From NCBI RefSeq assembly GCF_000002075.1, contig NW_004797961.1, positions 107,017 to 171,016 of the forward strand: 64,000 bases of DNA, written 5' to 3'. A program made the position numbers and the translations under genes. Source of the DNA: Aplysia californica. Its lineage: Eukaryota. This document shows, piece by piece, positions 1,282 through 59,100 of the stretch (the first letter of the stretch is position 1; each line of letters opens with the position of its first letter). The notes beneath the pieces were generated by a model. The model saw only the letters and a program-made list of their open reading frames with translations, did no database searches and was not told where the DNA came from.

Positions 1282-1282
1282 A

Positions 1283-1315
<33 letters not shown>

Positions 1316-1336
1316 ACACACACACACACTCACACG
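1282..1336. repeat. (CA)n microsatellite
   Basis: Direct reading. Confidence 0.9.
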
Positions 1337-2012: not shown

Positions 2013-2259
2013 CCCTATCCGTACGCCCTGGGGTCATTTTGTACCCTCGGGGTTGTATTCTTCACATTTTAGAATACTTCTAGTGCGAAGATCTCTTTGA
2101 AACGTTCAGTATTTCTCAAAAAATCATTTTGACAAATTTCTGTGCAAAGCGTACGGATCGGATTAAAGAGTAAATTTCCTGTTTGGAAAGTGGTGGCACA
2201 GAGTGGTGCAACTGCAACGTCGTATGGATACGATAGTAAAACACGACGTACGGATAGGG
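2013..2259 (+). mobile_element. piggyBac-type MITE
   Basis: TTAA on both sides; TIR CCCTATCCGTACG/CGTACGGATAGGG; inverted sister copy at 31696-31936. Confidence 0.88.
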
Positions 2260-16096: not shown

Positions 16097-17147
16097 TTTG
16101 TCAAAATTGTCAATGGAATAGATAGACAGACAGAGATTGTGGAGAAACGTCTCTTCCTTTAAGCCAGGGTCGTTCAATGTTGTGATGTTAAAAATGCTTG
16201 AATATTTTCAAAGCTTGTTTACATTTTCAATAAATCAATGTACTATGAATAACATACTAATTATAAATAATTATGGTATTTTAAGTAAAGCTAGGTGGAT
16301 GGAAAATAACATTTCACAGTTTCAGTGACAATTTTTACTTCCTCATTTGACATAGGCTAGGCCAACTGGCATATTACCAATTTACATGAATATTTCCTGT
16401 TCCGCCTTACGTGGAGTAATCTGCCCTTGGCTATGAATTTACTTTTCCTTTCGAATTCTACTGACTGCTGATTTAGATCTAGGGCCTAGATCTAGATCTA
16501 GTATTATACTAAGTATACTGATAGTAGCAGATCGTACCCAGACTTATCTTGTGACCTAGATATGCATCTATTAAACCGAAATTGAAAGGAATGATTTTTA
16601 CTTTGTTCCTTGAATACGAATCAACTTCAACAAGCAGTAGGATTTCCAAGTGTAACCTCTAATCGGAGAGGCAGTGTCCCTCTCTTCTTCCACTTGCTGC
16701 GCTGTGTGTGTAGGCCTACTGTACTGTACTCTACTTGATCTAATGTAATGAACTGTTGTCCCGTTGACTATTCAGAATTCAGGGTTTCCTCAGCTGTGTG
16801 TTAGTGACATTTAGATCTAGTGTCTCGGTTTTGGTTTCAGTTAGATCCGCAGCCTTTTGCCTAAACTTTGACAAATTAAAACAAGAAGTGAATTTATAAC
16901 CCACATTGATTCAAGTTTTGAGGTGGTTCGTGAATTAATTTGAACATTAGATTAGAGATTCTGAATTCTGTTGCTATTTGCGACATCATAAACTTTAAAA
17001 TTCTGCTGGCCAAAGGAATGTGTCATGTTCCAGTAGGCTTTTCTCTGATTGCCACTGCGTCTTTTGACTTAATTGAAAATAAAAATAAAAAACGCTGACT
17101 AGATCTAGATTCTAGATCTAGATCTAGATCTATCAAGAATAGAGTAC
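16097..17147. promoter_or_regulatory. Bidirectional promoter/5' UTR interval between RBM22 and DXO
   Basis: Divergent start codons 1051 nt apart; a YY1-like AAAATGGCG overlaps the RBM22 ATG. Exact TSSs are not visible. Confidence 0.7.
17099..17132. repeat. (CTAGAT)n palindromic microsatellite just upstream of the DXO ATG
   Basis: Direct reading; similar tracts near 13615, 13801, 14984, 16475, 17705, 45346. Confidence 0.8.
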
Positions 17148-41800: not shown

Positions 41801-43823
41801 TCTATGTATACCTGCATGTGTGTTTTTAGTCATATACAGCCAATAAAAAAATGTCCCTCTGGGACAATAAAGTATTACCTTATCTTATAAGTGCCAAGTG
41901 CTAGATGTGGGACTAGCGAGTAAAATATAAAGAGAAGGAGGAGCAGAGATATAAGGATAACAGATTATTGGAAAGAACCCTGTAGAAAGCCATTCGGAAC
42001 CAGAACACCCACCAACCACATCATGTCAGTTTGACAATGACCACTGAAAAGACTTAGCAGACCACATCATAGTTCCCAGCTACAAGCAGCTTATCCAGAC
42101 TCCATCATTTTAGTAAAAAATAAAGATTAAAATGTAGACTATTGTTCAAGAATGTTAAACTGAATAGATACTTTCAAGAGAACTGGGTCAAAGATTGAGT
42201 AGATAAAAAACCAATGATTGACATAAACTGTTTCAACTTTTACTTGTGCGACTCCCAATATTCAACAAAAATTAACCGCATTAAGTGGCTTCTAAAACCT
42301 AAAATTAAAATAGCATAATTTTAGAAAATGAATTCACACAAACTTCTGAATTACTGTACCCTGAAGCATAGCGACATACTATGAAAAATAGGTAGATCCA
42401 TTTTTAAAGACATAAATTGTCTCTTCAACGGAATGTTGCATAAATTATAGTACCTTCAAGAAAAAAATATAACTTTTCCCAAAAAATTAATAGAATCCAG
42501 AAACATGATTTAATTAATCATAAGTCACAAAGGTGCTTGAATTATACTGACATGCAGAGCGTAAAAGCCATCTGTGCAAACCCTTCTTCGTATAGCTCAG
42601 GGTGGGTAGTTCGCATCGGAAGAGTGCGGCACAAGGACTGAAGAAGAGGAAAAAATTGGAAGAATTTCAAAAGTAAACACCAGAAAATATCCTGTATCGA
42701 TCATTACAACTGACACGTTACACTTCACTGCTTGTCAAAGACAAAAATAAGAAAGTGCTAACTTAAGACAAAAAGACTTTCACTTTTTTGCATTTACTTT
42801 AGTTTGAATAAATAAATACACCCATTCATACTGTTTTCTTTATCATCAACAAAGTCATTTTTGATTAAATATTATGTTGTAGTTTGTTAAATTTTAAAGT
42901 ATCACATCATAATATAACCCAAAGTCAAAGCAGTCTCTTGATGAAAATGTCCACCAAAAAAACAAACAAACAAAGAGCAGAATTAGAATGCTGGCCAAGC
43001 ATATAACATATATGCAGAAAATAAAGTCGAGATACCTGTGTTGCTTGCTCGATAGACCGCGAAGTCAGCCATTCAAATATTTGACCATAAATCTCTCTCC
43101 ATCTCCTCGGCTGTTCACAGTTGAAAGAAAAAAACAATATAAATATATGTCAGTTATGACCGTTACTCAAGATGCAGAGAAGAGAATAAATACTTGATCA
43201 TAATTCATAGTTTGAGTAAAAGAATCTGAATGTTTTCACTTTATTGAATATGGAGAAACAGGAAAAATCTAACCCTGACTAACGGTAGTAGGCGATTGCT
43301 GATCAGATCAGTTTGGGTTTTCTAAAGTAGAAAGGTATCAACAAATCATAAATGATATTTTCAAAACATGGTAATAAACAATATGCAAATGAAACCATAC
43401 AAAATAAACAAAAGGTTAATATTAGAAACTGAGAAACAGATGATGAAACATGTCATCTTATTTTTATGAGAGAAAAAAAAATTGCATGCTGAGGGCATAT
43501 TTGGTCATCTAACTTTCACAACTGGCTTATCAGACCATGAAGCCAACTGGTATTTAAAGAGTAAACTGAAGAGAAAATAAAACTCGTGGCACTGAGAAGT
43601 GACAACAAACAAATTAAATATAAATTAAGTACAGATTTGTATTGCATATCAAACTCCTGATAACTGACATTTTCTGCAAGACATGCAGATGTGTATTAGG
43701 TGATAAAACAAACAATTCCCTTACATCAGGTCTGCTCAAATCATTTTCATTCAGATTCACGTCAGATTCTCTGAAGGCAGCCAAAATCTCCGGGACTGGC
43801 AATAAGGGTGATTCGAAGTTCAT
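32872..43823 (-). CDS. NUF2: Kinetochore protein Nuf2 (NDC80 complex), 12 coding exons, 445 aa
   Basis: Exons 43823-43725, 43110-43036, 42637-42552, 41420-41359, 40776-40679, 39512-39402, 37781-37662, 36278-36099, 35790-35708, 35191-35000, 34157-33995, 32940-32872; phases consistent (1338 nt). Nuf2 CH-domain motifs CGFESFSVEDVIAP and RSSRILSAFINF; KIIHSPERYK matches the Nuf2 IVxSPE motif; long coiled coil. An extra exon in the 33265-33932 gap is not needed but cannot be excluded. Confidence 0.9.
33265..33932. other. Assembly gap (668 N) in the last NUF2 intron
   Basis: Run of N. Confidence 1.
35648..35719. repeat. 33-bp tandem duplication spanning the NUF2 exon 9 donor
   Basis: TTGTCTAAAAAGCAATTAAAGTTGTACTTTTCC x2 plus TTGTC. 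Confidence 0.92.
38398..38646 (-). mobile_element. MITE family E, inverted copy
   Basis: Reverse complement of 21172-21413 with both TIRs. Confidence 0.85.
39061..39945 (-). mobile_element. Cluster of three family A copies around NUF2 exon 6
   Basis: Copies ~39061-39275, 39537-39714 (TSD ACA(A/G)ACAATTTA) and ~39765-39945. Confidence 0.85.
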
Positions 43824-44267
43824 GTTTCCTATGGAACGATAGAAAAGTATTAATCGTTCGTAAAACAGAATTTGTGTTCCAAACAAAATGAAGTAACACT
43901 TAAGAAAAATTAAACAGATTTATATCCATGTAACAAACGGACAATAAAAATTTATAAAATGTTTTTTTTTAAAGAAGAAAAAAACAATACTGTAACATAA
44001 AAGTCAATTGTAAAACACTCAGGTTCTGGCACAGGCGCATTATCAAAGATTTCTGTAAAACGATGATTGCAATTCAGAGAAGTGCAATAAAAGGAAATCA
44101 AATAGGCCAAGGTCTACACCTACACCTTCTCAGAACAGAGAAAATCTTTTACTATTCTCCCAGCCTTGCATAAAGTTGGTCCTGTGTTAACCCTGTCATA
44201 TAGTCACAGTGCTTTTATAGCAGAAAGCTTCATCAAATCTCAGTTTGATTTTGATAAGTGAAGCATA

Positions 44268-44775
44268 GTGGTGAATTCAGGCGCTCCTCAAAATAATGAA
44301 ATCGAAGATGCCGGCATTTTTCTGACCGTCTGGCAATTTTCGAATGTTCTTTTCTTTCTTTTTTTGGTCAACTCCTTTTATCTCCATTTAGAAACACATT
44401 TCTGTGTTGATTTTTTTAAAAATAATCTATTAACATTTGGTCACTTGGTGCAATAATGCGCTGGTGAAAATATCCGTTTCGGTCACCTGGTGCAGTTCTG
44501 CGCCAGGCCCGAGAAGCCCGCTGCAGTCGCTCTCCTGGCTGGGTGACCAGATGGGGTATTTTGTACTGCTGGCTGAGTGACTGGAAAGTGTTAAAGGCAC
44601 AAAAAATGTTAAGGACCCTCAAGCTTTGAAAGTCACCATATTTTGACAACCATATTCTCGCTATTTACCCCTTAAGCCAGGTGCCCCCCACCTCCTTTAA
44701 AAGCAAATCTCGACTGTCATTTTTTGTTCAAAAGAGTGACAAATGAATAAAAGCTTTAATCTAAGATGACACCAA
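44268..44775 (+). mobile_element. MITE family F, diverged copy with internal insertion
   Basis: Left end GTGGTGAATTCAGGCGCTCCTCAAAATAATGAAAT matches the 12081 copy; right end degenerate. Confidence 0.55.
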
Positions 44776-45015
44776 TAACTCCCATCCAAAAAAGTGACAC
44801 ATATTGCATGGTTTGGTGTATGTTTAAAAGCAGTCAGGTTTTCTGGGTTGTTTTTTTTAACTCATGCACCCATCTCATGCATACGATTGATATAGTTTTC
44901 TAAAGTATTTTGTATGCTGAACACGAAATGGCCTTCATTTTGGCAATTAGGATTGATATTTACTTGAAAACAATTGATTTGCAAGGGTTTTAGTGTGCTC
45001 TAAAGCAAAAACTAA

Positions 45016-45240
45016 GGCGATTGTCAAGATTTCCGCGTTTAATTCCGATGTGCGCTTTTCAAAGCCTAAGGTATGTTTCGCTTTGGTGCATTTGGAGTTA
45101 TGGTTAGGGTTAGGAGGGTCAGGGTTAGGGTTAGGGTTGAAGAGTTAGGGTCAGGGTTAGGGTTAGGGACCAAAGCGAAACATACCTTAGGCTTTGAAAA
45201 GCGCATATCGGAATTAAACGCGGAAATCTTGACAATCGCC
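45016..45240. mobile_element. Foldback MITE with 72-bp TIRs and a (TTAGGG)n core
   Basis: 45016-45087 vs 45169-45240 are inverted with 1 mismatch; direct AAAACTAA flanks. Confidence 0.9.
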
Positions 45241-46298
45241 AAAACTAAGGAAGTTTATCCCTCAAATCAATGCATCTGTAATCTGTGCGTGGGTGAATAA
45301 AAGGAAAATTTTTCAGGTTTTCTTTCATGGAGTAGCAAAAACTACTAGATCTAGATCTAGATATCTAGATCTACCATATCGGCACAATTTTTAAAAATCC
45401 TCTAAAATCAAAAGTATTTGATTTTGAGCAGGTTTAGAATCTAAAATATATGATAAGTTTGATGAAAGCAGCAGCAGCCAATCAGGAGGCTAAGTCTGTG
45501 CATTGATTATTTGTGTGTGTGACTGTGTATGTGTGTGTGTGTTGTAAGGGAGGGGGGGGTGCAACTGCTTAAATAAAATTATGCTTCTATTCCTCATTGG
45601 AGAACTGTTGCTGGTAGTGGTCAGCAGAATCTGCAGGAGTGAGAAAAAGAGCAAAGAGGTAACAGCAGCGCCAGCACAGTAGTTATTCTGGTTACTGAAA
45701 GTTACTGGTTGTAGTCCTTAGTCTGTGTCTACTTGATGTTTAGAGACAGCAATGTCAGTCAGAAGATCAGACCTGAGGAGAAGATGCATGAAGAATCACA
45801 GTCACACCACTCAGGGCCAGTAGACTGCAAAAAATACAATAATTCTAAAGTAAAGTGAAGCCAATGATAGATGGGGGTAGGGCAGGGGGCTGAGGCAGCC
45901 CTGAGGCTACTAGATCTATACTAGGGGTAAAAGGTCATCAGTCAGGACACAAACAAGAGTTCAAAGGATCCCAGATCAGGGCTCACCCAGAACAGATACA
46001 TTGTGAACGAGCATCTAAATGGACAATTAAGAAGTGCTCCCGAGTTATTGTGCGGGTGTTAATAGTAATTATAATGTGTGTAGCCTAACCAAAAACTGAC
46101 GTCACTCACTCTCACTGAACTGGAACGGGTCGCCAGGGCTTGGCACACTCAAGTCACACTGTGTGTGACACTATTTACACACTCTATTATAATTTTCAAA
46201 TAGGTTATCTGCAGATTTTGCAAGTGTCTTGAACAACACATGACGATGACATATTTGCTACTGCGTCCCCTCTGAAAAAATTCAAGCATAATTCTCAC

Positions 46299-46657
46299 CT
46301 TTGAACAGGACAGTGTTGAAAGAACGTCAAATCTAAAGTAAACAAATCATGTTTACAAACAAGCCTCTGTCCAGTGTGTTTGTGTCAACTTCCGTTTGAA
46401 AGTGGCGCTATCCGGAAGTACACATCTCGGCGTCATAGAATTAAAAATTCTGTTGGCACTTTTTCCACGGTTTTAATAAATACTTTTGTCTCACTTCATA
46501 AAGAGTGTAACTTCCCCAAAAATTTCATTTTATGAAAAAAATATTAAAAATTATTCTACTTATTTCTAAGACAGTTGACGAATAACAAAGAGTTAGACGG
46601 GATATTTGTTTCGACTCCATTACCCACATCCTTGGGCACTTTTTATAATGTGGAAAC
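46299..46657. promoter_or_regulatory. Bidirectional promoter NUF2/ELP6, including a probable non-coding NUF2 exon 1
   Basis: Minus-strand donor AG|GTGAG at 46299/46298 pairs with the acceptor at 43829-43830, 5 nt before the NUF2 ATG. Opposed ETS cores ACTTCCG 46388-46394 and CCGGAAGT 46412-46419; TTTGAA at 46395-46400. Confidence 0.65.
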
Positions 46658-49600
46658 ATGCTGGCCCAGATTTGTCAGTTTCTTGCTGTTGACTCAAGCT
46701 ATTTTCCTCAAAATGAGCATATAATCATTGGTGATAGGTCTAATGAAGGTTGCTTCTTGGTACATTATTTCCTTAACTTGTGTGAGAAACAAAACAGACC
46801 AGTGTGCGTGATCGGATTATCTCAATCTTTCCATCATTACAACACGGTTGCCCACAAGCTTGGGACCAACCTACTTTCAGCTTGCGATGAGAACAAAAAC
46901 CTTCATTTTATTGAAGGCCTAAAATTACTTGGTGGTTGTTTTGACGTTGTTTCGACTGATTCTGATATCTCCAAACCATTTCTAGAGTTTGTTAATGGTA
47001 TTAGCACCCCACTTTTGCAATATATCCAATCGTCAGTTGATAAGTTAACCCAAATTGAGTGCCCTGTGGATAATGTCCATGGTCCTGTAGTAATTGTTGA
47101 TGATTTATCTGTGCTTTTGACTGCTGGAGCCTCAGCTAAGGACATAATACTGCTCCTGAATGGGCTACGCCGCATAGTTTCATCTCAGAAAGTGAAGGGC
47201 TCGTTAATTACATTCTCAAGTCTTGAAAAAGAGGATGAGGAAATCGAGGAAGTCTGGGCATACATGTCACACATCAGTACTCTGAAAATTGAAGTTTCAG
47301 CTTTGAGCTCAGGTTTCTGCAAAGACGTACATGGTCAGGTGAGTTTATTGTGGGTGGGTTGATTGATAGGCCTACTATCCATTTTCCCAATGTTGGATAT
47401 GTTGACTAGATAGGTCGTTTGGTTCTTAATTCATAATTATAAAGTGTAGTGGCAGCCTGGTGGTGGATTTTCTTGGTTTGGGCAGCTAAAATTGAGGTCT
47501 GCTAACCAAGTAAGATTACTGGGTTGGTTTTGAGCTTGTCTATAATCTATCATGTATGTCTATGATTGAGAATTAGAAAAGTTTGACCATTGATTGCGTA
47601 TAATGTGCTCTTTTGATCCAACAGCATAAAGCCTTTATGTATGCAGATGTTTTCCTGTTTCAAAGTTTGGTCGTCGTGAAATGAAACATTTTGGACCAGC
47701 CAGGTATTGTTGTTTGCAGGACCAGTGTCACAGTGTGGGCCTCCTGTCCAATCCAGTGTCCATTCCTATTGAGATGCTGTGATCTTTCACAGTGGTTATA
47801 CTGTGGGGTAAAAATAGGCCTGCTTATCGACATGGCCACCTCTATTCTCACCCGGGGTGAGAATAGTGCAGGCGAGTCTTTTGGCTATTCTCACCCGGTG
47901 CGCGTTCACCGTTATAGCCTAGATCTATTCTAGGCCAACAAATTTTGCGTTCACCCTAAACCACAGAATTCTACACTGTGATAACACAAAAATTGTAGAA
48001 TTCTGTGCTGTGAACAAACGTTCCATTACAACTGTACTTGTAGCCTACTAAAAGCGTACAATTTTGTCTGTGGGCAGTGGAGAGAGTGAGAGAGAGAAAG
48101 AGAGAACAAAACAAAATGGCGACCCGCGTAGTTCGGCTCGATTCGAAAAGTTAAATAGCCGTAGCATCTTTGTAGACAACCAAATTAATTTACTTTTGTG
48201 TTTTAACATCATTTTTTAACTTTGTTTTGGTCAATTTGATCGTCCACACCGATAGACAGTATTCAGACAGAGAGAGAGAAGAGGGGAGGAGTAGATCTTG
48301 CGAGAACTTCCGGGCGGGTGAGAATAGCCACTTTCATGAGGTTTCTATCGACATCGTTGTCACGACACTGTTGGCCTCATTTTGCATTTCTGACCACACA
48401 GCAATTCTTGTCTCTTTTTGAGTCATGTTTTTGAATTCCAGTCATTTCGTCACACCGGTGCAGTCAAGACATCACAGTCATCTCGTCACACCACAAATCC
48501 ACAAGGTTGGATGGAGACAATCATTTCGTAACACAATTGCGAACATCAAACGCGCATTGTCATGTCAATCGCAAATCACGATTTTTGGGGAGGGTTGGGG
48601 GGCTGTGTGTGGAAGGACGGGTGGGGGGCTGTGCGAGTCGTTGTGCCTACCTAATTAGCTACACGGTTCATTAATATGTAGGTTTATTGACAATATCGAG
48701 TCAAATCAACAAAGATTTTAAGTATTATTGATGAAAGGTGTGATTGCCAAGATCATAATATTAGTTCTGTTAAAAATAAATTAGCTATTTAAATGTATGG
48801 TACTGCAATTTTGCTAAAAGCTAGACCCTTACTTTCAAACAAAGCCTTACTTACTTTTTACCAGGCATTGTTTTTGCCTTATTTAAACTATTATTTAGCT
48901 ATGGAACAGTTTGGACGAAGATTTAATTTACATTAATAATTTATTTAACTTCCAAAAAAGCTTTAAGCTAATCCTTGAAAACTCTACTAGCATATATAAC
49001 AATTTTAGAGAGATAGCCTAAGGGAAGTCATTTCATCACACATATTATTTCGGGTGTGACGAAATGACTGGTTACCATGTTTTTCACTTGACTGCTGAAT
49101 GCTGTAATGGTGCTGAAGCATTAGTTTGTCACTTACACAGATGCGCTTAGGAAAGAAAAACGTTTATCTGCTAGTTAAAACTGTCTTGAAAAGAAAGCAA
49201 CACAATTTAGTTGTTTTTTTAAATAGTGGGGTCGAGCAGAAATAAGCACTGGTAATTTTTACGAATAACAGTTACAGAATAAATTATAAGCTCAATGTCT
49301 GGGGAATTGTATCCTAAAAATTATAAGAATCAGCCCTGTCTTTGTACAAAACATAGAGGGATATATTTCCGGTAACTAAATCATAACACTGGTTAGTCTA
49401 TATTCCTATTTGCTCTGTAGTGGCTGGATATTTTCACGAGACCTAGATTGCCATCTTTTTTAGTTTTAATCTGGATTCGTTTCTATGCCTTGAATCCTGA
49501 ATTCGGCATATGATTTTTTAATTACATTTCATTTGGTTTTAGGGCAAACTTTTACTTTGCTTAAAATTTGTTTGTTTTTAACATCTCATGTTTCAAGAAT

Positions 49601-51531
49601 TGTGTTCAATGATAAGACAAGGTCTGTTATATAATAAGGTCATTTGCTTAACCTATTTAGCTAGATTTTTCCATAACCCTGCCCTAATCAGGTCTGCATC
49701 TTGTGTGAATATGAACAGATCTCTCTCAAACAAGAGCCAGTGTTGAAGATTGGGTTAGTGACATGGCTGGGGGAGACAGCATTGTAATGGTGGCAGTTTG
49801 TCTGACTTCATGGAGAAAATTGTTCAGATCAGTATGGTGAATTGTAGACGATGACCAACTCAAAATGAAGGTTTACTTCATGTTGAAGTAATTGCTGAAA
49901 ATGTAAAACAAAAGAAAAAGGGGAAAAGATTTTCTTAAATCCAAGTCCATGCGAGCAGAGTTCCAGTTCTGTCATTGTTGTTCCATAAATGTATTGTGTG
50001 TGTTTTTCAAGCCCGTGTTTCTTTTTTTAAAGCTTGAAGTTCTTCTGTCTGTGTATGGCTTTAACTATTTACAATTTTACGTGTATCGTTTTTTTTTTAA
50101 AGATTGGAGTCGCTCAATCATTTCTTAATTTCACTCTGTGAATGTAAAACAATCATTTTTTTTAGCTCTTATTAAATTTCAGTCTCAGCGAGTAAGGTGA
50201 CTATTAAAATTTAAATGTTTTGCACATTTCATGGAGATTTTGTGCAGTGTCTAATTGGATACAAAGTGTGGGGTGTACTAAATGGGCAGATATTTCAGAA
50301 GCTCACTTTTTATAATTCATATTTTCATAATCTTTTTGTGTATGGTGTTATGTTAGTACTCTTTGAATAGTAAAGCACCTGAGTTCTATGGTGTTTCTAT
50401 AAAAGACGGTCACATTAAAGTAATGAACAGTTCAGAAGTATGAAAGGGTTTGAGCATGCCTTAGAATTAATGCAAAAGTTTTTATAGGCATGTTTATTTG
50501 GTCAAGATTTCGAAATATGAAATGAAATGGGATGCGCATACCTAAGTCCTTTATTTTTTTACTCAAGGGAAATTACAAGTGTTTTAAATTACATGGAAGT
50601 TAGTTCTGTAATTTCCGAGAATAACTGATTGAGGCTCCAGATTCTTCGAGCCTATTTCAAAAGACTAAGAATTCAGAGCATGAAAGAGGCCCATTTTCCT
50701 GTCACTTTAGACTATAATTTTTGTTCTAATTAAGATTCAGTAGTATCTTTTGTCTTGTTTGTGTTTCTCTCTTTAAAAGTCCGCTCCTGTAGTGTACCGT
50801 CTGCTCACGCAGGTTCATACACGTGTTTTAAGGGTTGGGTTGTTGTTTGGGTAGTCTTTACATACATTATTTTAGCTATCAGCATATTTAAGTTTAGCTG
50901 TTAATGTTTTAAAGTCCTCTAAGTGTTGCTAACAAGTAGTTTGGAAATTATATCATTTCACCTTATAAGTTTTTGGAAAAGTTTGAGAATGGGCAAACCA
51001 GGCAAATAAAGACTATTATAAATAAACCGTTATATTTTGAGAAAGTAGATTCATATAGAATAGGAAGTACTGTTCATTGTTGAAAGCATTGAAATGTTTG
51101 GGGATATTAAAAACAGGATGAACAAACCGAAAAAGTGACTCAAATTACAACCAGTAACATCGGTGGCAACACCACAGAACAAAATATTTGGCTGTCGATA
51201 CTAGGAGGGGTGATTTTTTAAGAGTCGCAATTGTACGTTTGTTCATGTGCCATCACTCAAGCTGTGGGAGGGAAATAATTTATTCAGATGCCCAGACTAT
51301 ATTCTTAAACTTTCTTGATTTGAAGATGGTAGGACTGTTCCGGGGGGGGGGGTTGGTTTTAAGAAATCTTTTATAGGTAGTAGTGTGAGGGTTTTTTTCA
51401 CCCTGTTTCTTTATAATCTGAGTCGTCACTTGTGTCTTATAAATGACAATTAACCAGGGCTCAGCTTTTGGGGTGTAATTACTGGTTTGTGTTCGGATTC
51501 AGTTGAAACAGTTGCCCTATCGAGCAAACAC

Positions 51532-51563
<32 letters not shown>

Positions 51564-52505
51564 AAAAAGAAGAAAAACAACAACCCCAAAGCCTCTGGCA
51601 TTTCTCAACAGTTTTTACACACTTCTGTCTTAATTGAACACAAAGTAAAGCCTGGAAAATCTAACACGTCCCTCTTTTTAGAAAGCACCTGAAATGACCT
51701 AACCCTGAAGCATTCGCTGCTATCATGTGTTTAAAGATGAAGCAGCTTTGTGTCAGAAAAGGAAATTATAGATCTGTCATTAGTCGCAAACAGATTGGAA
51801 CATGAGTCCTCTCAATTTCGGTACGATTTATACCACCAGCAAACTGCCATATTTGAGACTGACTTACTATCTTTCATATATGTGTTGAAGTGGTGGTCAA
51901 AAATAGCGTTTGATGGGATGGAGTAGTGTGATCATTTGTTTGTTTCAGATTGAGCGCAGTGAATTTGGGCATTGTTTGGGATTTCACAGGCTACAGTCAT
52001 GAAAGCTTGATTCGAGGCCTCTTTTTTTCTCTCTCTCTCTCATGTCTTTACTTCAAACAATTCATGTCAATGACATTTTTACACAGAGACGTAAGTCTTG
52101 TTATAAAAACCTTTAGACTTCTTACTGTGAAAAAGAGAGAAAAGGTGTATGAATAGTTTTTGTTTTTAGTATTTATATTTTTTAATGAAAGGAAATAGTA
52201 CTTACACTTTCTGTCAATTACCAGGACTCAGAGCTTACAAGGAGTCTTTGATTCTAAGATACAGAAGTTTAGACCTCCATGTGGGTTAAAATCTCAAACT
52301 CTTTTAGGCCTATTGTATACCCACTAAATCAGTCTGCCAACAATTTTGGTTCTAAATTGGCCATTTCTTTATTTTGCAGATGAAAATTGAATGGCAAGAT
52401 AGCTGCACAAAACCAAGGAAGTCCAACTCAAAGCACACCCAGTTTAAGCTGTCTGACAAAAGTGTTGATCTCTTCGCTTCTGGTATGTCCGCTGCTGTGC
52501 TCTAA
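46658..52505 (+). CDS. ELP6: Elongator complex protein 6, 2 exons, 268 aa
   Basis: Exon 1 46658-47338 (QSFHHYNTVAHKLGTNL, FIEGLK, VVIVDDLSVL, LSSGFCKDVHGQ|GT). Exon 2 52380-52505 (ttgcag|MKIEW...QFKLSDKSVDLFASGMSAAVL*), matching the conserved ELP6 C-terminus. Phase 0 intron. Confidence 0.93.
47838..48330. mobile_element. Inverted-repeat element (MITE-like)
   Basis: CTATTCTCACCCG at ~47840 and ~47885; inverted GGGTGAGAATAG at ~47855 and ~48316. Confidence 0.5.
48438..49071. mobile_element. Inverted-repeat element, possibly Helentron/DINE-like
   Basis: Exact 19-bp IR CCAGTCATTTCGTCACACC / GGTGTGACGAAATGACTGG; extra partial copies at ~48475 and ~49026, the latter forming a terminal hairpin. 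Confidence 0.65.
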
Positions 52506-52808
52506 AGCAGCACTGTGATTGTTTTGGAGGAACGGACAGACTTTTTGAATTAACGCCACAACTTTGGATTCTGGCATCATAGAGAAAGAAAAAACCTGCG
52601 TCGTTTTTGTTGAACGGTAAATCCACTTCTCTCTACTGATCTCGTGTTCTGAAGTGACTGTAACCTCACTGGTCGCACCTATTTATGCACGTAGCGTCTC
52701 AGGCATGTTTTGGAAGCCACCAGGCGAATCAATTAAACTCTGCTTTGTCTTGCACATCAATCAGCGTAGTCGTTGTTGTGCGGGTAAGTAGGTTTGGATA
52801 GAAGCACC

Positions 52809-55800
52809 ATGTCATCGTCGTCTCCCTGGGACGCGTACTCGCAGCACACAGGGCTCACCTCCTCCCTGGAGCCCTATGCTCACCCTTTCTCCACCGACAT
52901 GCGAAACCTGGCCGGAGGGACTGGAGCTCCTGGCATGAGCAGCCTGACAGGGGAGAGCATGCTCGGGTACCCCAAGTCCAGCGATTTGTCGGCTGCCGCA
53001 AATCTGAATCTGGCGTCTCCGTACGGTGCGTATGGGCAGTCGTATCCTGGGATGCCAGATCTAGGGTTCCCGGGCGCCTCCCTGAGGCCCAGCTCGGCGA
53101 CTCACTCGCCCGTTGCTGCGGCAGCGGAAAACCTCCCAGCATCCTCCCCTCACGGACAGTATTCCGGCACACCCACCTCGGAGACCCAGTCGTCGTCTCC
53201 CGCCTTCTCCAACTCGACGTCTCTGTACACCCCGAGCACCATCTCCAGCAGCATTGCCTCCAGCCCCTACGCCCAGGCCTTTGGGAGCAGCAGCAGCTCT
53301 GCCGCCGAATCGGGTTCGAGGGGCCCGCACTTTTCGCCGTTCGCCCAGTCCTACGGGTACCCGATGTACGGCTACAACCAGGTGGGCGGTTTCCCGACTG
53401 CCAACTCTCTGGACGGGGTCAACCGCTACATGAGCGGCATCTCCTCGTCCCAGCTGATGCAATCCTCGGCCATGGGCCTCTACTCCAACAGCCAGGCGGG
53501 CCAGATGCCGTTCGCCTACCACCCCTCCATGGGGTGGAGCCCCAGTGCTATCCCAGGGTTCCAGTTGAAGGAGGGAGCAGATCTCATGTCGCCGGAAGAG
53601 CTGGAGCGCTACCGCTACCGCCAGCTGTCCAACCCGTACTTCCCGGGCCTGCCGCCCGGGGGCCCGCCCGGACGGAACTTTCCCCCCCACCCCTTACAGC
53701 AGGGTATGATGAGGAGCGGCCCGTTCCTGGACGACCGCGTGCACAGCCCTGCTCCAAAGAAACCCAAGAAATCCACAGAGGAGGCGGAACGGCCCCCGAC
53801 GCCAGCCCCAAGGGATCCCGCGTCGTTTCACTCGCAGAGAGGTATCTACTTGTTCACATCCAACTCCGAGCCGGGAAACCCCAAGTTTTATGGTGACAGA
53901 TACGTTCTTTACGAGAAAGATTTGTGTGAAAAGCTGTCTCGTGTTAGCCTTCCGGGGAAAATCCAGTATGTTTACAATCCTCTTGAGTATGCATTTGAAT
54001 CCCATTTAAAGTTTGTGCGCCGGTTTTGCACTGGGGAGAAATACATATTGTTTGTTGGGATGAATCCAGGACCTTTTGGTATGTCTCAAAATGGTGTACC
54101 GTTTGGAGAATGTCAAATTGTGAAAGAGTGGTTGCAGATTGATGGGGAAGTATTGAAGCCTGTATTGGAGCACCCGAAGCGACGTGTCGTCGGGCTGGAT
54201 TGTTCTCGGTCCGAGGTCACCGGGGGGCGGTTCTGGCAACTGTTCCGAACTCTTTGTCACACTCCAGAACATTTCTTCAGGACAAGCTATGTGCACAATC
54301 TATGTCCTTTTGCCTTTTTAACGGACACTGGTAAAAACGTCACCCCTCCTCAGTTAACGTCGTCTGTTTTAGACCAGATCAACGCGTTGTGTAACGCCAC
54401 TCTGGTCGAAGTTGTCCGGCTACTAAAATGCAAGTACGTCATATGCATTGGGAAGTATGCCCTGGCCCAGGCTCAGAAAGCATTATCTGCCGACGAATTC
54501 AGTGGCATCACCTTGGAATGTTTGATGCACCCCAGCCCCATCAACCCTGCTGCGAACAAGGGCTGGGCGGATATAGCCATCAAACAGTTAACGGAAATAG
54601 GTATCATTGAAATCATTCAGTACGGAAGGGTGCCCTACCAGCCTCAGAGCCAGCCTCCCCCTTCCTTGTCTCACCCACCTCACGCCTCTTCCTCATCCTC
54701 CATGAGTCACCATCCGCATCACCACCACCCTTACCACAACAAGCAATCTCCGGGTCACTACGGATTTCAGTCACCTCCCGTTCAGTCATATCACCACTCG
54801 CCAGCTCAAGGGTCCAACAACAACCACCACGGCCAGTCTCCGGCGCACGCTTCCGGCCTGAGTCAGTCCCCGGCTCACGCCCCGTCTGCGCGGAACCAGT
54901 CATCGCCTGCCCACGCCTCGTCCCGCGCTCAGTCATCCCCGGCACATTCATCCTGTAGTCAGTCTCCGGCCCAGCCCCAGCAGAACCAGGTGGCGGCCGC
55001 CAACCAGTCCCCCAGTCAGACCACAGGTAGCGGCAGCAGCAGCAGCACCCTTCCAGGACAGCCGTCCTCAGAGCAACTGCAGGACGGGCAAAAACTTTTG
55101 AACAAAGACAATGGGGAGAAGGGGGGCTCGCAGGACTCCTCTCTAGACTCGTCTGCCGCGGCCGCAGAGAAGACTCAGGAGGGCAAGGGCTTGCCCCAGC
55201 TGAACACAAACGGCATTCCAGCATATTCAGGGGATTCACAAGGTCATGAAAACGGGTTGCAGAACCCTCACAGCGAGCCCGGCTCGCAGGGATCGGAGGT
55301 GTCCAAGGGCAACTCTCCCAGTATACAGTATCCTTCCGCAGGAAATCCACAAGTGAACGCAACAGACTCTCAGCTGCAAAACCCCCAGATGAGCTCTGCG
55401 AACCCCCAGATGACCAGCAGTAGCCAGATGAACACGACAAATCCGCAGATGCACATGCCCCTGGGCTCGGGCCACCCCCACATGGGCATCGGCATGTCCA
55501 TGTCGGACTCGCCAAACCTCCAGCAAGGCGCTCCGGTGGACCAGCACGCCAGCCTGACCAACCAGCAGATCGGCTCGCCGCAGATGAGCAGCCAGAACTC
55601 GCACCTGGGTGTGTCCCAGAACTCGCACCTGGGCTCCATGAACTCCCACATGGCCTCCTCCATGGGGGCGCACATGGGCATGGGCTCGCAGATGGGGATG
55701 GGCGTCGGGGTGCCGATGGGCCGGGACCAGGGGATGAGCCTCCACGGCCAGATGGGCTCCATCAACCCCTACAGCCAGCAGCAGCTGGACATGTCCCAGA

Positions 55801-56156
55801 TGAGCGGCAGTTACGGCGCCGGCCCCAACAGCATGTCCCTCAACAGCTACTCGGGCATGCGGCCCAGCAGCTCGGAGATGCCGGGCTACGCGGCCTCCCA
55901 CATGGGCCTGCAGAACCCGTCGGCCATGGGCATGGCCTCGATGAGCAGCATGCACTCGTCGGCCGGCGGTGGTGGGCCCATGTCCGCGCAGCAGCTGGGC
56001 ATGTTCAACCCGCACATGAGCCGCATGATGGGCCCGCCGGAGCAGCAGATGGGCATGCACGCCGGCCTCAGCTCCATGTACGACAGCGGCCAGCTGGGCA
56101 AGGAGATACCGCCCTACGGAGGCCACTACACCGATAAGCCGCCCGAGTGCAGTTAG
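52809..56156 (+). CDS. SMUG1: SMUG1-family uracil-DNA glycosylase with very long low-complexity N- and C-terminal arms; intronless, 1115 aa
   Basis: First ATG at 52809 (gcaccATG) with an in-frame TAA upstream at 52785. UDG family-3 core ~53900-54625: YVYNPLEYA, FVGMNPGPFGMSQNGVPFG, SEVTGGRFW, YVHNLCP, MHPSPINPAANKGW. The frame is uninterrupted for 3.3 kb with strong C/G-ending codon bias. Confidence 0.93.
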   Translation: MSSSSPWDAYSQHTGLTSSLEPYAHPFSTDMRNLAGGTGAPGMSSLTGESMLGYPKSSDLSAAANLNLASPYGAYGQSYPGMPDLGFPGASLRPSSATHSPVAAAAENLPASSPHGQYSGTPTSETQSSSPAFSNSTSLYTPSTISSSIASSPYAQAFGSSSSSAAESGSRGPHFSPFAQSYGYPMYGYNQVGGFPTANSLDGVNRYMSGISSSQLMQSSAMGLYSNSQAGQMPFAYHPSMGWSPSAIPGFQLKEGADLMSPEELERYRYRQLSNPYFPGLPPGGPPGRNFPPHPLQQGMMRSGPFLDDRVHSPAPKKPKKSTEEAERPPTPAPRDPASFHSQRGIYLFTSNSEPGNPKFYGDRYVLYEKDLCEKLSRVSLPGKIQYVYNPLEYAFESHLKFVRRFCTGEKYILFVGMNPGPFGMSQNGVPFGECQIVKEWLQIDGEVLKPVLEHPKRRVVGLDCSRSEVTGGRFWQLFRTLCHTPEHFFRTSYVHNLCPFAFLTDTGKNVTPPQLTSSVLDQINALCNATLVEVVRLLKCKYVICIGKYALAQAQKALSADEFSGITLECLMHPSPINPAANKGWADIAIKQLTEIGIIEIIQYGRVPYQPQSQPPPSLSHPPHASSSSSMSHHPHHHHPYHNKQSPGHYGFQSPPVQSYHHSPAQGSNNNHHGQSPAHASGLSQSPAHAPSARNQSSPAHASSRAQSSPAHSSCSQSPAQPQQNQVAAANQSPSQTTGSGSSSSTLPGQPSSEQLQDGQKLLNKDNGEKGGSQDSSLDSSAAAAEKTQEGKGLPQLNTNGIPAYSGDSQGHENGLQNPHSEPGSQGSEVSKGNSPSIQYPSAGNPQVNATDSQLQNPQMSSANPQMTSSSQMNTTNPQMHMPLGSGHPHMGIGMSMSDSPNLQQGAPVDQHASLTNQQIGSPQMSSQNSHLGVSQNSHLGSMNSHMASSMGAHMGMGSQMGMGVGVPMGRDQGMSLHGQMGSINPYSQQQLDMSQMSGSYGAGPNSMSLNSYSGMRPSSSEMPGYAASHMGLQNPSAMGMASMSSMHSSAGGGGPMSAQQLGMFNPHMSRMMGPPEQQMGMHAGLSSMYDSGQLGKEIPPYGGHYTDKPPECS

Positions 56157-59100
56157 TCGCGGCTGGTGGTGGTGGTGGTGGTAGGAGGTGTGACGCCGCG
56201 CAACCTAGTGGGGTTTGTTTTGTTTTTCTTTTCTTTCTCTTTAAAAAATTTTTTTTTTAGAAAGAGTTTTGTTGGCTTGGGGACATGCATGTTATTCATA
56301 TTTGGTTGCTTGTTTGTATTGTTATGAATTGTTGTGTTTTGGGGTCTTTTCTTTATTTTTTCTTTCTTTTTTTTTTTTTTCTTTCTTTGTTTTGTTTTTG
56401 TTCAAAGTTCCATGATTTAGTGTCAGAAGGTTCAGGAAGTGAAGAATCCATGTGACAGATCAGAAAATTCCTCGCACACATCACTTTCATCTCATGATTT
56501 TATTTTAACCTTAGTTGTCTCTGGTCCACTGATATTTTTGTCGCATTGTTTTATCTTCGAAAAGGATGTCATCTTTCTCTTTGTATGAAAATGTTTTTAG
56601 ACCCATTTACCTTGATGGGGGTCCTTATTTTATTTTTAGGGACGATAAGTATCATCATCTGAAGGTAATGCTTTAACTTTTATGTCATTTGTATATATTG
56701 TAAAATGTATAGTCAGTATAGTTATTGATGGTAAGATGTATTTTTATAGAATTATCTACGTATTGGTCTCATGAAAGAAATATTTTGTAATGTGTAGATA
56801 ACATATTCCTACAATTTGTTTCATGAAGCAATGCTTAATATACCTTGTCAACAAAGTGTACTGAGTGTAAGTGTATGCGTACACTTATTATATATTATGT
56901 GAGAGGGAGTGTTTGATTATGATGTCTTGACGTTGTTGTTGAATGGTTCGACGTTGGTTGTTTGGAATATATATTATATATATATATACAATACTTTGGT
57001 TGTCTCTTGCTATGTTCCTGTTTGTTTGAATGCCTGTCCTTTCAAGACTGCAGAGCAGAATTAGTTTCTGTACCCCTAAACGCTGGACCAGAAGCATCAC
57101 TGCATCTTCACTGGACACGACGTTCAGATTCAAAATCTTCGTGTTTACACACCAACCAAACTCAGTCTTCCGCTACTAATTTACTAGGGATGATGTGTGT
57201 GTGTGTGTTTTTATCTAGGTTCTGTTCCAACGTCCTCCGCACAGACACCCCCAGTTGTCTGCTCCCTCTCCAACAATGTCTTTTTTGTATATTTTGTACC
57301 TGGTTGTTCATTCGTTGTTTCAGAACTTTTTTTTGACAAGGGTATTGTTTGCTGAAGAGTGTATGTTGTACTTGCAGAGCGGCAGTGATGTGGCAGAATT
57401 GTGCGTGTGAGAGAGAAGAGGATACAGCACACTAAAATGAGGACAAAAGTTGGAAAAATATATCACTCTGGTCAGAGTGCGGGATATTTTTAGCACATTT
57501 TTAAAATTTGATTTATTTGGGGTAAGGGAGGGGAGGGGGGTGCTTTGCTGATTTTTGAGTCTGAAATATGTTGAAACAGTCTTTTAAAAGATTTTTCTGG
57601 TATTTCTATGCGGCACTCTTTTATGAAACCCTCTTTTTTTTTTCATCTTAAAGTTAATGGTTAAACCAATCTTTTTGTCGTGCACAGGATTTCCTATTTT
57701 CAGTCTACGGCAAAATACCTTGTAACGGACATGAATCGTTACTTATATTACTCCTCTTCCTTTGCTGCTGCGATCTTGCAGTTCATTTATAAATTAGGAT
57801 ATTATATATAAAAGTTGTTCAAATTATTTGTTTTATTTGGCTAAAAATATTGCTGTTATCGCTGTCAATGCAAGTTGTGAGATTTTTATGATTGAGAGAA
57901 ATGAATGGTCATGACTGCGTGTGAGTAGAGATCTCTCCACATGTTGCAACGGCAGCGGGAATCACAAAGATTTTTAAGCCTGACAAATTCTTTATATGAA
58001 CAGAAAGATATTGATTTTTTTGTTGTGCACAAATGGAAGTGACAGTGCTATATTGGGGGCATTTTACATTTTATTCAAGAAAGTTCAGCTCTAGTCCACG
58101 CTTTCTTCAAAACCTACTTTTCTTTGTTTGTTTGGGTTTTTTTGTTTGTTTGTTGCTGTTTTTTTGCTTTTTTAATCCCATGCTTTACTGTATGACACCA
58201 TTTTTGTCTTATGTTTTCCTTTCTTTTTCATGATTGTCTTCCTGGCTGGTCCGCTCTTCTAAACTACCGTTACAACCACATAATGTAATTTGCAAATTTA
58301 CATGCTAGTGAAAGTTTTTGCCACTGATGTAGATTTGTCAGGTTCGGTTTGGTGAGAGTTTGATGGCCCGGTTACACGTAACGATAAATTGTGTCAAATT
58401 CGTCGTGTGCGAAAACTATCCGTTTTATCGACTGTGTAGTCTGTTTAGACGTTCGGATCTGTCGTCCAGTTTTCTTTTGATCAGGGAGATTCCTAGTAAT
58501 TGACTTGGCTGCAGATGTGCAACGCACCGGGTGACCTTGATACACAACTTCACCATTGATGATCAACTGAATAATAAAAATGGTAAATTGTACATAATTA
58601 CGCATCAAATCAGGTTCCTGGAGAGCAACCTTACTTAGTTTGAGACGCTGTTTCCGAATATGAAATCAGTTTTACCTGCGATAAATATTTTTAAATTTTG
58701 AGCCCTAAGTTAATCCAGCGCAGCGGCAAATTTCCAAGTGATTCTACATCACAGCGTGTCTCCCCCAAAACTGACAGTGATCGCACGGAAAATATCTAGC
58801 AGCGCTTGATTTCTCAACCGAGTCTTCAAGCCATCGTCCAAGCTTTGTACAATTTTGTGCTTACACCTGATGATTTGTCTCATGATCGATAGATCATCCA
58901 GTTTTTGTACAATTTATTGTTGCGTGTAACCGGGGCTTTACTGCGCTCGTAAGTTAACTGCATAAGGTCATATATGAGGGGGCATGGTAGATTTGTCAGT
59001 CTGCAAATCTTTTCCAATATTTAAATTTCTTTAGCGGCAACAGTTTCATTTGAATTCGGAGTGTAGCTTTCCTTGCATTCCTTTTTTAAAATAGGGTAGG

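What the first reader, a model, noticed from the sequence alone, without database searches (positions are those of the whole stretch)
52380..52811. ELP6 and SMUG1 may share one transcript/exon (candidate bicistronic or operon-like unit)
Seen: the SMUG1 ATG is only 303 nt after the ELP6 TAA on the same strand. By my reading the first canonical AATAAA after the ELP6 stop is at 58573, beyond SMUG1; only a variant ATTAAA (52732-52737) lies in the spacer. There is no strong acceptor next to the SMUG1 ATG and no CTAGATCTAG cluster like those at the other promoters. ELP6 exon 2 begins exactly with ATG, so in any transcript lacking ELP6 exon 1 it becomes a 41-codon uORF. Two further uORFs (52685-52801, 52705-52791) stop 7 and 17 nt before the SMUG1 ATG. 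Inference: SMUG1 is translated by re-initiation, trans-splicing or from a shared terminal exon. This would couple a tRNA wobble-uridine modification gene with a uracil-processing enzyme.
Basis: partly seen in the sequence, partly recalled or inferred. Interest (0 to 1): 0.82.

Follow-up and report, generated by a model that had tools for sequence, protein, structure and literature searches.

The report
ELP6–SMUG1 tandem pair with read-through RNA
In the sea hare Aplysia, the only SMUG1 DNA-repair gene is an intronless ORF starting 303 nt after the ELP6 stop codon; this layout is conserved across euthyneuran slugs and snails, and RNA runs from ELP6 into SMUG1, but it is not shown that SMUG1 protein is made from such a two-gene message.

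Summary
The window is Aplysia californica. ELP6 has two coding exons (46658-47338 and 52380-52505). A 303-nt spacer follows, then an intronless 1115-codon SMUG1 ORF (52809-56156).

- A spliced RNA contig in Aplysia joins ELP6 exon 1 to exon 2 and runs unbroken through the spacer, 173 nt into SMUG1.
- A 4.7-kb contig from a lymnaeid snail carries an uninterrupted ELP6 ORF, which I infer to be spliced RNA, plus a 254-nt spacer and the whole SMUG1 ORF.
- The NUF2(-)/ELP6(+)/SMUG1(+) order is seen in four genomes. The ELP6 exon 2 to SMUG1 junction, with a 208-303 nt spacer, is seen in seven heterobranchs. In Patella and Babylonia, SMUG1 has three exons and no ELP6 within 10 kb.

Three results argue against an obligate bicistron.
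- The few poly(A)+ raw reads stop near 52600.
- Sixteen AUGs precede the SMUG1 AUG on a full two-gene RNA.
- The spacer is unconserved and unstructured.

My best reading is a retrogene-like SMUG1 lodged in the 3' flank of ELP6. ELP6 polyadenylation is weak and leaky, giving read-through RNA, and SMUG1 probably has its own start site in the spacer. I found no sign of trans-splicing. Single-molecule reads are needed to settle it.

The parts
37938..46445 (-). NUF2-like gene exons, divergent from ELP6. The first exon lies about 210 nt from the ELP6 ATG, which suggests a shared bidirectional promoter region.
   Evidence: tblastx matches collinear with the Nuf2 genes upstream of ELP6 in Biomphalaria and Physella. 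Pfam Nuf2 gene calls.
46658..47338 (+). ELP6 coding exon 1 (227 codons). The donor is CAG|gtgagt.
   Evidence: Pfam PF09807 E=6.7e-43. 100% identical to NCBI Aplysia ELP6-like P0001. Single copy in the genome.
47339..52379 (+). ELP6 intron (5041 nt). It holds a SINE-like high-copy repeat at about 47832-48335.
   Evidence: A GT..AG joint skipping 5041 nt in RNA contig X5. An intron at the same codon position in Physella, Biomphalaria, Plakobranchus, Okenia and L013.
52380..52505 (+). ELP6 last coding exon (41 codons plus TAA).
   Evidence: tblastn identity of 54-82% to the ELP6 C-termini of ten other loci. The Pfam ELP6 profile is completed only with this exon.
52506..52808 (+). ELP6-SMUG1 spacer. 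It is fully transcribed and holds the candidate ELP6 3' end and the candidate SMUG1 promoter and 5'UTR.
   Evidence: RNA contig X5 runs colinear from 52377 to 52981. Spacers of 208-303 nt in seven species, poorly alignable. Folding z-score +2.9 and no Rfam match. Single copy.
52575..52596 (+). A-rich tract 70-91 nt after the ELP6 stop. This is the candidate proximal ELP6 polyadenylation region.
   Evidence: A comparable A-rich tract at +37 to +81 in five of seven species. All poly(A)+ raw reads of ELP6 lie before 52600. In a related Tara species, two metatranscriptome contigs end at +89, just before an A-run.
52685..52801 (+). uORF of 38 codons ending 7 nt before the SMUG1 ATG. A second uORF (52705-52791) ends 17 nt before it.
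   Evidence: The peptides are not conserved. uORF stops within 17 nt of the ATG occur in five of seven species, and this may be chance.
52732..52737 (+). ATTAAA variant poly(A) signal, 77 nt before the SMUG1 ATG.
   Evidence: It is not positionally conserved; in Physella and Biomphalaria the ATTAAA lies at +38 and +53 instead.
52784..52790 (+). Donor-like GGTAAGT, probably not used.
   Evidence: It lies in an Aplysia-specific stretch of about 26 nt in the spacer alignment. RNA contig X5 passes through it without a joint.
52809..56156 (+). Intronless SMUG1 ORF (1115 codons plus stop). The glycosylase core is at about 53895-54617 and is flanked by low-complexity arms.
   Evidence: Pfam UDG. E=3.2e-77 to Xenopus SMUG1 1OE4 over 240 of 247 residues, with the GMNPGPFGM and HPSP.N motifs. 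Single copy in the genome. Orthologues of 1031-1073 aa, 61-75% identical over the full length, in other heterobranchs.
58573..58578 (+). First canonical AATAAA on the + strand after ELP6, 2.4 kb past the SMUG1 stop.

Best explanation
ELP6 and SMUG1 form an ancient, tightly linked head-to-tail gene pair.

Inferred origin: in the ancestor of euthyneuran heterobranchs, an intronless, retrogene-like SMUG1 came to lie 200-300 nt behind the ELP6 stop codon and became the only SMUG1 gene.

Inferred 3' end of ELP6: ELP6 has no canonical poly(A) signal. It ends mostly at a weak A-rich site about 90 nt after its stop.

Shown: the whole spacer is transcribed, and RNA contigs link spliced ELP6 to SMUG1. 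I read this as polymerase often running on through the weak site, giving ELP6-SMUG1 read-through RNA.

Inferred source of the protein: SMUG1 protein is most likely made from shorter transcripts that begin in the distal spacer, roughly 60-130 nt before the ATG. A ribosome on the two-gene RNA would have to pass a 268-codon ORF and 16 AUGs.

On this reading the pair shares a chromatin and transcription neighbourhood and overlapping RNAs. It is not an obligate bicistronic message.
For: 1. Aplysia RNA run X5 holds a 782-nt contig that joins 47335 to 52377 (GT..AG) and then runs colinear to 52981. That is ELP6 exon 1, exon 2, the whole spacer and 173 nt of SMUG1. ELP6 exon 1 and the stretch 52380-52900 (exon 2, the spacer and the start of SMUG1) are each single-copy in the genome.
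2. Lymnaeid contig L001 has the ELP6 ORF uninterrupted at 26-820, a 254-nt spacer, SMUG1 at 1075-4296 and 450 nt of 3' sequence. Related genomes carry a 3.2-3.6 kb intron at that ELP6 position, so I infer L001 is spliced RNA.
3. The same junction occurs, with spacers of 208-303 nt, in Aplysia, Physella, Biomphalaria, Plakobranchus, Okenia, a stylommatophoran and the lymnaeid.
4. Patella and Babylonia SMUG1 have three coding exons and no ELP6 within 10 kb. Aplysia has one SMUG1 copy.
5. There is no AATAAA in any of the seven spacers, and an A-rich tract lies at +37 to +91 in five of them.
6. In poly(A)+ raw reads, ELP6 has about 1x sense-strand depth in exon 1 and in 52380-52599, and zero depth in 52600-53199.
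7. Sixteen AUGs lie upstream of the SMUG1 AUG.
8. uATGs occur at the chance rate in the proximal spacer (27 observed, about 24 expected). They are scarce in the last 50-70 nt (2-4 observed, 6-9 expected, P about 0.03-0.05).
9. CpG observed/expected jumps from 0.41 to 0.97 at 52600.
10. A block of about 20 nt is conserved at about -80 to -105 from the ATG in three hygrophilan snails.
Against: - No SMUG1 transcription start was observed, and none could be with the one read-laying run allowed.
- The raw-read evidence for an ELP6 end near 52600 rests on fewer than ten reads. The tool also warns that dips in depth are not findings.
- The uATG depletion test used cut-offs chosen after seeing the data, and the species are related.
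- No consistent TATA or Inr motif is shared by all seven spacers.
- Keeping stop and start within 300 nt for this long, with no canonical poly(A) signal, is what a true bicistronic unit would also look like.
- In X5 no RNA covers the last part of the intron, so a start upstream of exon 2 is unlikely. That leaves little room for a promoter.
Confidence: 0.5

Rival explanations
1. True conserved bicistronic mRNA. SMUG1 has no promoter of its own. A long ELP6 isoform that skips the weak proximal poly(A) site carries SMUG1 in its 3' part. SMUG1 is then translated by internal entry or by re-initiation.
For: Spliced ELP6-to-SMUG1 RNA contigs in two species. Conserved spacing of 208-303 nt in seven heterobranchs. 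No AATAAA in any spacer. A retrogene-like origin, which would initially leave SMUG1 without a promoter. An unstructured spacer, compatible with scanning after termination. uORF stops within 17 nt of the ATG in five of seven species.
Against: Sixteen AUGs and a 268-codon ORF lie upstream. Re-initiation after long ORFs is inefficient in eukaryotes (general knowledge). The spacer has no conserved sequence or structure that could be an IRES. uATGs in most of the spacer are not depleted. Poly(A)+ reads show ELP6 without downstream coverage. The SMUG1 contig depth in X5 (9) is about twice that of the bridging contig (4.9). Contigs are not single molecules.
Confidence: 0.25
2. Alternative splicing from the ELP6/NUF2 promoter. 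A non-coding or short 5' exon splices onto the exon-2 acceptor, or into the spacer, and skips most of the ELP6 ORF. The resulting SMUG1 mRNA has exon 2 in its leader.
For: The exon 2 acceptor is strong, and in Aplysia exon 2 starts with ATG. SMUG1 depth exceeds ELP6 depth in X5.
Against: The only joint seen onto 52380 comes from the normal exon-1 donor. The ATG at the start of exon 2 is absent in five of the seven linked species. No alternative contigs were reported.
Confidence: 0.1
3. Operon-like unit resolved by spliced-leader trans-splicing at the SMUG1 5' end.
For: A short intercistronic distance, as in nematode or tunicate operons.
Against: No loose 5' end or foreign leader was reported at 52500-52810 in any run (low power). 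There is no acceptor-like site by the ATG. A full-text search found no paper reporting spliced-leader trans-splicing in molluscs.
Confidence: 0.03
4. The bridging contigs are uninformative by-products, such as nascent unprocessed read-through or assembly joins of two overlapping mRNAs. The two genes would then be fully independent, and the linkage would be kept only by chance or by shared enhancers.
For: The tool itself warns that a contig across two genes shows no single transcript. Annotators call separate genes in Aplysia, Physella and Biomphalaria.
Against: The X5 contig is spliced, so it is not genomic DNA or raw pre-mRNA. The same continuity appears in a second family of snails. Seven lineages keeping a spacer under 310 nt while the ELP6 intron varies from 3.2 to 5 kb argues for constraint.
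Confidence: 0.12

Closest known systems
Mammalian bicistronic genes with a second ORF in the 3' part of the mRNA (RPP14/HTD2, GDF1/CERS1; reviewed in PMC4705651)
   Same: Two unrelated, conserved proteins are encoded head-to-tail on one strand with a short gap. RNA contains both ORFs, and the arrangement is conserved over long times.
   Different: For those genes a single mature mRNA and translation of both ORFs have been shown experimentally. Here only assembled contigs link the ORFs. The downstream ORF is very long (1115 codons), and ELP6 appears to have its own proximal 3' end.
Conjoined / read-through transcription of tandem genes with weak poly(A) signals (general phenomenon; plant example with NMD control in PMC9768141)
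   Same: The upstream poly(A) signal is weak or non-canonical. RNA is continuous across a short intergenic gap. The upstream gene also makes its own short mRNA.
   Different: Typical read-through pairs are not conserved at a fixed distance under 310 nt across a whole subclass of animals. They also often splice out the intergenic part, whereas here the spacer is retained.
Polycistronic loci of green algae (PMC7896298, PMC11892635)
   Same: They are conserved bicistronic-looking loci, without trans-splicing, in a eukaryote.
   Different: In algae the upstream ORF is short and poor in AUGs, so leaky scanning reaches ORF 2. Here 16 AUGs precede the SMUG1 AUG, which excludes that mechanism.
Retrogenes that land in or next to a host gene and borrow its transcription
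   Same: SMUG1 is intronless, while Patella and Babylonia have three exons. It has moved to a new neighbour, sits just behind the host stop codon, and shares RNA with the host.
   Different: No poly(A) tail remnant, target-site duplication or surviving parental copy was found. Intron loss plus rearrangement cannot be excluded.

Membership tests
Eukaryotic bicistronic (dicistronic) mRNA gene pair | Two complete non-overlapping ORFs on the same strand, separated by a short spacer | tested here: met
   303 nt between the TAA at 52505 and the ATG at 52809.
Eukaryotic bicistronic (dicistronic) mRNA gene pair | One mature, capped and polyadenylated RNA molecule carries both ORFs | tested here: inconclusive
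   Spliced short-read contigs bridge the ORFs in Aplysia and in a lymnaeid. No single-molecule read was available, and the sparse poly(A)+ raw reads did not cover the distal spacer.
Eukaryotic bicistronic (dicistronic) mRNA gene pair | The downstream ORF lacks its own transcription start | not testable with these tools
   No 5'-end data. Indirect hints (uATG pattern, CpG step, a conserved hygrophilan block) lean towards a separate start.
Eukaryotic bicistronic (dicistronic) mRNA gene pair | The downstream ORF is translated from the two-gene RNA | not testable with these tools
   No ribosome profiling. There are 16 upstream AUGs and no structured or conserved spacer element.
Spliced-leader operon | A common leader is trans-spliced onto the downstream gene's mRNA | tested here: inconclusive
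   No loose end or leader was reported at 52500-52810, but depth was very low. A literature search found no mollusc spliced-leader report.
Read-through (conjoined) tandem genes | Weak or absent canonical poly(A) signal behind the upstream gene, plus RNA continuity across the gap | tested here: met
   No AATAAA in any of seven spacers. The X5 contig is colinear from 52377 to 52981.
Retrogene | Intronless copy, where orthologues in outgroups have introns, at a new genomic location | tested here: met
   Patella and Babylonia SMUG1 have three coding exons with two introns in the core and no ELP6 within 10 kb. The heterobranch ORFs are uninterrupted.
Retrogene | Poly(A) remnant and target-site duplication flanking the insert | not tested
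   Not expected to survive this long. The sequence after the stop is T-rich rather than A-rich, judged from the reverse-strand ORF translation.
SMUG1 (UDG family 3) | Full-length similarity to solved SMUG1, with the GMNPGP and HPSP.N motifs | tested here: met
   E=3.2e-77 to 1OE4 over residues 6-245 of 247. Both motifs are visible in the alignment. Pfam UDG.
ELP6 (Elongator subunit 6) | A match to Pfam PF09807 over its whole length | tested here: met
   Exon 1 alone covers profile positions 6-231. The annotated 268-aa protein P0001 covers 6-252 of 252, E=5e-47.

The most novel reading that the evidence does not exclude
Across euthyneuran gastropods, over a span I would put at 200 million years or more (my own estimate, not computed here), the only SMUG1 gene is expressed as the second cistron of the ELP6 mRNA and translated by a non-canonical initiation mechanism. 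That would be a deeply conserved animal bicistronic gene, born by retroposition into a host 3'UTR, without trans-splicing.
Probability: 0.22. Interest if true: 0.75.

Novelty: new member of a known kind. Interest (0 to 1): 0.45.

Why it matters
If SMUG1 really depends on ELP6 transcription, this would be a clear and datable example of a retrogene surviving by riding on a host gene's 3' end. It would add to the few conserved bicistronic units known in animals that lack trans-splicing. Aplysia and Lymnaea are experimental neurobiology models, so it could be tested directly. If SMUG1 has its own start site, the locus is still a good case of extreme, long-lived gene packing. A weak ELP6 poly(A) site and the SMUG1 promoter would have to coexist within about 300 nt, which makes it useful for studying termination and transcriptional interference. 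For annotation, read-through contigs at this locus should not be taken as fusion genes. The suggested functional tie between tRNA wobble-uridine modification and uracil excision has no support beyond adjacency.

Tried and rejected
- Exon 2 alone against Pfam and against solved structures gave nothing, because it is too short. It was confirmed instead through the annotated protein P0001 and tblastn.
The joined step was left out.
- Looking up the Aplysia ELP6 protein in the contig collection found no record.
- L012 and L013 at first looked like possible transcripts starting in the ELP6 intron. L012 comes from a genome-skimming DNA run of Okenia hiroi (PMC7995900), so it shows synteny only. The library type of L013 is unknown and I treated it the same way.
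- Run X1 proved to be genomic DNA, because it covers the intron evenly.
- The Rfam scan and RNA folding of the spacer gave no known RNA element and less structure than shuffled sequence.
- A TATA-like motif search found no element shared by all species.
- uORF peptides are not conserved.
- The NCBIfam scan was empty, because that library covers prokaryotes.
- Literature searches found nothing on this locus.
- ELP6 contigs from the Tara Oceans samples (L002-L008, L016) do not carry SMUG1 downstream.
- Earlier notes of this scan held only first-reader remarks, with no follow-up.
Full report
**What is in the sequence**

The window is from Aplysia californica. The 227-codon ORF at 46658-47338 is 100% identical to the first 227 residues of the NCBI protein 'elongator complex protein 6-like [Aplysia californica]' (P0001, 268 aa). 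The remaining 41 residues are encoded by 52380-52502.

Exon 1 matches Pfam ELP6 at E=6.7e-43 and ends at a CAG|gtgagt donor. Exon 2 follows a ttttgcag acceptor, begins with ATG and ends with TAA at 52503-52505. The annotated protein covers the ELP6 profile to its last position only with exon 2 included.

The next ATG-initiated long ORF starts at 52809 and runs without interruption to 56156, 1115 codons. Its core matches solved Xenopus SMUG1 at E=3.2e-77 over 240 of 247 residues, with both catalytic motifs. It hits Pfam UDG.

The remaining details of the finding also hold.
- The spacer is 303 nt.
- There is no + strand AATAAA between 51021 and 58573.
- ATTAAA lies at 52732-52737.
- The two uORFs end 7 and 17 nt before the ATG.
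- There is no CTAGATCTAG cluster near SMUG1.

**RNA evidence in Aplysia**

Only one run search and one read-laying run were allowed. I laid 47200-53199 so that the ELP6 splice, the spacer and the SMUG1 start would all be visible.

Run X5 is a small 2018 run kept as contigs. It holds one 782-nt contig, mean depth 4.9, that joins 47335 to 52377. This skips 5041 nt with GT..AG ends, which is the ELP6 intron. The contig then continues colinear to 52981. It therefore contains spliced ELP6, the entire spacer and the first 173 nt of the SMUG1 ORF. The next contig, 53025 onward, has depth 9.

ELP6 exon 1 and the stretch 52380-52900 (exon 2, the spacer and the start of SMUG1) are each single-copy in the 927-Mb assembly. 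The contig therefore comes from this locus and not from a processed copy. X5 has no coverage of the last part of the intron. No joint or loose end was reported inside 52506-52808, and the donor-like GGTAAGT at 52784 is read straight through.

Run X1 covers the intron evenly and is genomic DNA.

The two poly(A)+ raw-read runs (X19, X20) are very thin here. They give about 0.9x in the exon-1 bin and 0.2-1.5x in 52400-52599, all on the sense strand. They give nothing in 52600-53199. By my rough calculation from the table, X20 has about 3-4 reads' worth of letters in 52380-52599, whereas about 10 reads would be expected in 52600-53199 at equal depth. This suggests that most ELP6 mRNA in those samples ends near 52600, just after the A-rich tract at 52575-52596. 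It rests on fewer than ten reads, though, and the tool warns that dips in depth are not findings.

In the run search, several other runs hold 0.96 of the sampled words of 52300-54400. That is what RNA lacking only the 80 intronic bases would give. This is an inference, not a test.

**Other species**

The ELP6 word search led to a 4746-nt Logan contig, L001. Its contents are:
- ELP6 ORF at 26-820, uninterrupted;
- a 254-nt spacer;
- a 1073-codon SMUG1 ORF at 1075-4296;
- 450 nt of trailing sequence.

Its proteins are 98% (SMUG1) and 88% (ELP6) identical to those of Lymnaea stagnalis, so it is a lymnaeid. Physella and Biomphalaria have a 3.2-3.6 kb intron at exactly this ELP6 position. From that I infer that L001 is spliced RNA, and thus a second, independent case of RNA continuity from the ELP6 start to beyond SMUG1. 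The library type of its run is not on record.

Genomic loci show the same order, NUF2(-) / ELP6(+) / intronless SMUG1(+). Stop-to-ATG spacers are 242 nt in Physella, 210 nt in Biomphalaria and 208 nt in Plakobranchus. The Aplysia window also has NUF2-like exons on the minus strand up to 46445.

Two further contigs carry the end of the ELP6 intron, exon 2, a spacer and SMUG1. L012 has a 226-nt spacer and is from a DNA skimming run of the nudibranch Okenia hiroi (PMC7995900). L013 has a 223-nt spacer and is 88% identical to a Candidula SMUG1, so it is a stylommatophoran.

The junction is therefore present in Nudipleura, Euopisthobranchia and Panpulmonata, which covers crown Euthyneura.

In Patella and Babylonia, SMUG1 has three coding exons, with two introns inside the glycosylase core. 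No ELP6 lies within 10 kb. Aplysia has a single SMUG1 locus. Simultaneous loss of both introns together with a new neighbour is the signature of a retrogene that replaced its parent. This is an inference. No poly(A) remnant or target-site duplication was sought, or could be expected to survive.

**The spacer itself**

The seven spacers are 29-45% G+C and almost unalignable.
- None contains AATAAA. Variants such as ATTAAA, AGTAAA and AAGAAA occur at varying places.
- Five of seven have an A-rich tract at +37 to +91 after the ELP6 stop.
- In a related Tara Oceans species whose ELP6 is not followed by SMUG1, two metatranscriptome contigs end at +89, exactly before a genomic A-run that the DNA contigs continue through. 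This fits a short ELP6 3'UTR as the family habit.
- The Aplysia spacer folds less stably than shuffled sequence (z = +2.9) and has no Rfam match. There is therefore no sign of a structured or conserved IRES.
- A full ELP6-SMUG1 RNA has 16 AUGs before the SMUG1 AUG: 12 in exon 1, 3 in exon 2 (counted per exon, without joining) and 2 in the spacer make 17 ATGs, one of which is the ELP6 start. That rules out the leaky scanning used by algal bicistrons (PMC11892635).
- Across the seven spacers, uATGs occur at the chance rate further than about 55 nt from the ATG (27 observed, about 24 expected). They are scarce in the last 50-70 nt (2-4 observed, 6-9 expected, P about 0.03-0.05, cut-off chosen post hoc). 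This is what a short SMUG1 leader starting inside the spacer would give.
- CpG observed/expected rises from 0.41 to 0.97 at 52600 and stays high through SMUG1, unlike the ELP6 body.
- Three hygrophilan snails share a block of about 20 nt at about -80 to -105 from the ATG, in otherwise unalignable sequence. The peptides that would start there are not conserved, so it looks like a DNA or RNA element.

All of these are hints, not proofs.

**Reading**

Shown:
- The two genes are real, and the spacer is fully transcribed.
- Spliced ELP6 sequence and SMUG1 sequence sit on one RNA contig in Aplysia.
- A lymnaeid contig carries both complete ORFs.
- The arrangement is conserved across Euthyneura and absent in two outgroup gastropods.

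Inferred:
- SMUG1 arrived as a retrogene.
- ELP6 mainly ends at a weak proximal site, and polymerase often reads through.
- SMUG1 is mostly translated from transcripts that start in the distal spacer.

I give this overlapping-units model 0.5. A true bicistronic mRNA gets 0.25, an alternative 5' exon model 0.1, uninformative by-products with fully independent genes 0.12, and trans-splicing 0.03. No report of spliced-leader trans-splicing in molluscs turned up.

**Comparison with known systems**

The closest experimentally proven relatives are animal bicistronic genes such as RPP14/HTD2 and GDF1/CERS1 (reviewed in PMC4705651), and ordinary conjoined read-through pairs. The two defining features of a bicistronic gene could not be tested here: one mature molecule carrying both ORFs, and translation of the second ORF from it. 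I therefore do not file the locus as one.

It meets the tested criteria for a read-through tandem pair and for a retrogene-like relocation. It is a new member of a known kind. The deep conservation of the sub-310-nt spacing is the unusual part.

**Relation to earlier notes**

Two first-reader notes bear on this.
The motif lies in an Aplysia-specific stretch, and the RNA contig passes through it unspliced.

Noticed in passing
window 13612-17720 and 45345-45919: The palindrome CTAGATCTAG (up to 1 mismatch) occurs 22 times, against 1.1 expected. The copies often overlap in tandem. They cluster in two regions, one of them inside the 5' part of the NUF2-like gene about 1.3 kb upstream of ELP6.
   Followed up: partly
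window 47832-48335 (ELP6 intron): A SINE-like high-copy repeat with enormous depth in both DNA and RNA runs. Many reads have poly(A) tails starting at 48264-48267, and there are fixed junctions at 48147 and 48194. It looks like an expressed retroposon family.
   Followed up: no
L002-L007 (Tara Oceans contigs): A planktonic relative, whose ELP6 is 62% identical to that of Aplysia, has ELP6 without the coding intron in DNA contigs and no SMUG1 within 440 nt downstream. RNA contigs differ from the DNA, and from each other, upstream of a 5'UTR acceptor, which suggests alternative first exons. They end at +89 after the stop.
   Followed up: partly
L008:1156-1899: In a second Tara species, ELP6 is followed after only 125 nt, on the same strand, by an ORF for a C2H2 zinc-finger protein. 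This is another very tight tandem pair behind ELP6.
   Followed up: no
L001:965-995, L009 about 13376-13400, L010 about 13725-13750: A block of about 20 nt (core GATGGTGTACATGAC) is conserved in the ELP6-SMUG1 spacer of three hygrophilan snails, 80-105 nt before the SMUG1 ATG, in otherwise unalignable sequence.
   Followed up: partly
window 46445-46658: The first NUF2-like exon (minus strand) and the ELP6 ATG are only about 210 nt apart, and CpG observed/expected is 1.4 there. This is a likely bidirectional promoter linking a kinetochore gene with ELP6.
   Followed up: no
P0021 and P0023 (Candidula unifasciata): This land snail has two giant SMUG1 paralogues, which are 72% and 65% identical to the lymnaeid protein. 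L013 matches the second. Whether both sit behind an ELP6 copy is unknown.
   Followed up: no
window 52500-56200: The Aplysia SMUG1 ORF is about 60% G+C in a 35-40% G+C neighbourhood. By eye, the lymnaeid orthologue (L001) looks much less G+C-rich; I did not compute its composition.
   Followed up: no
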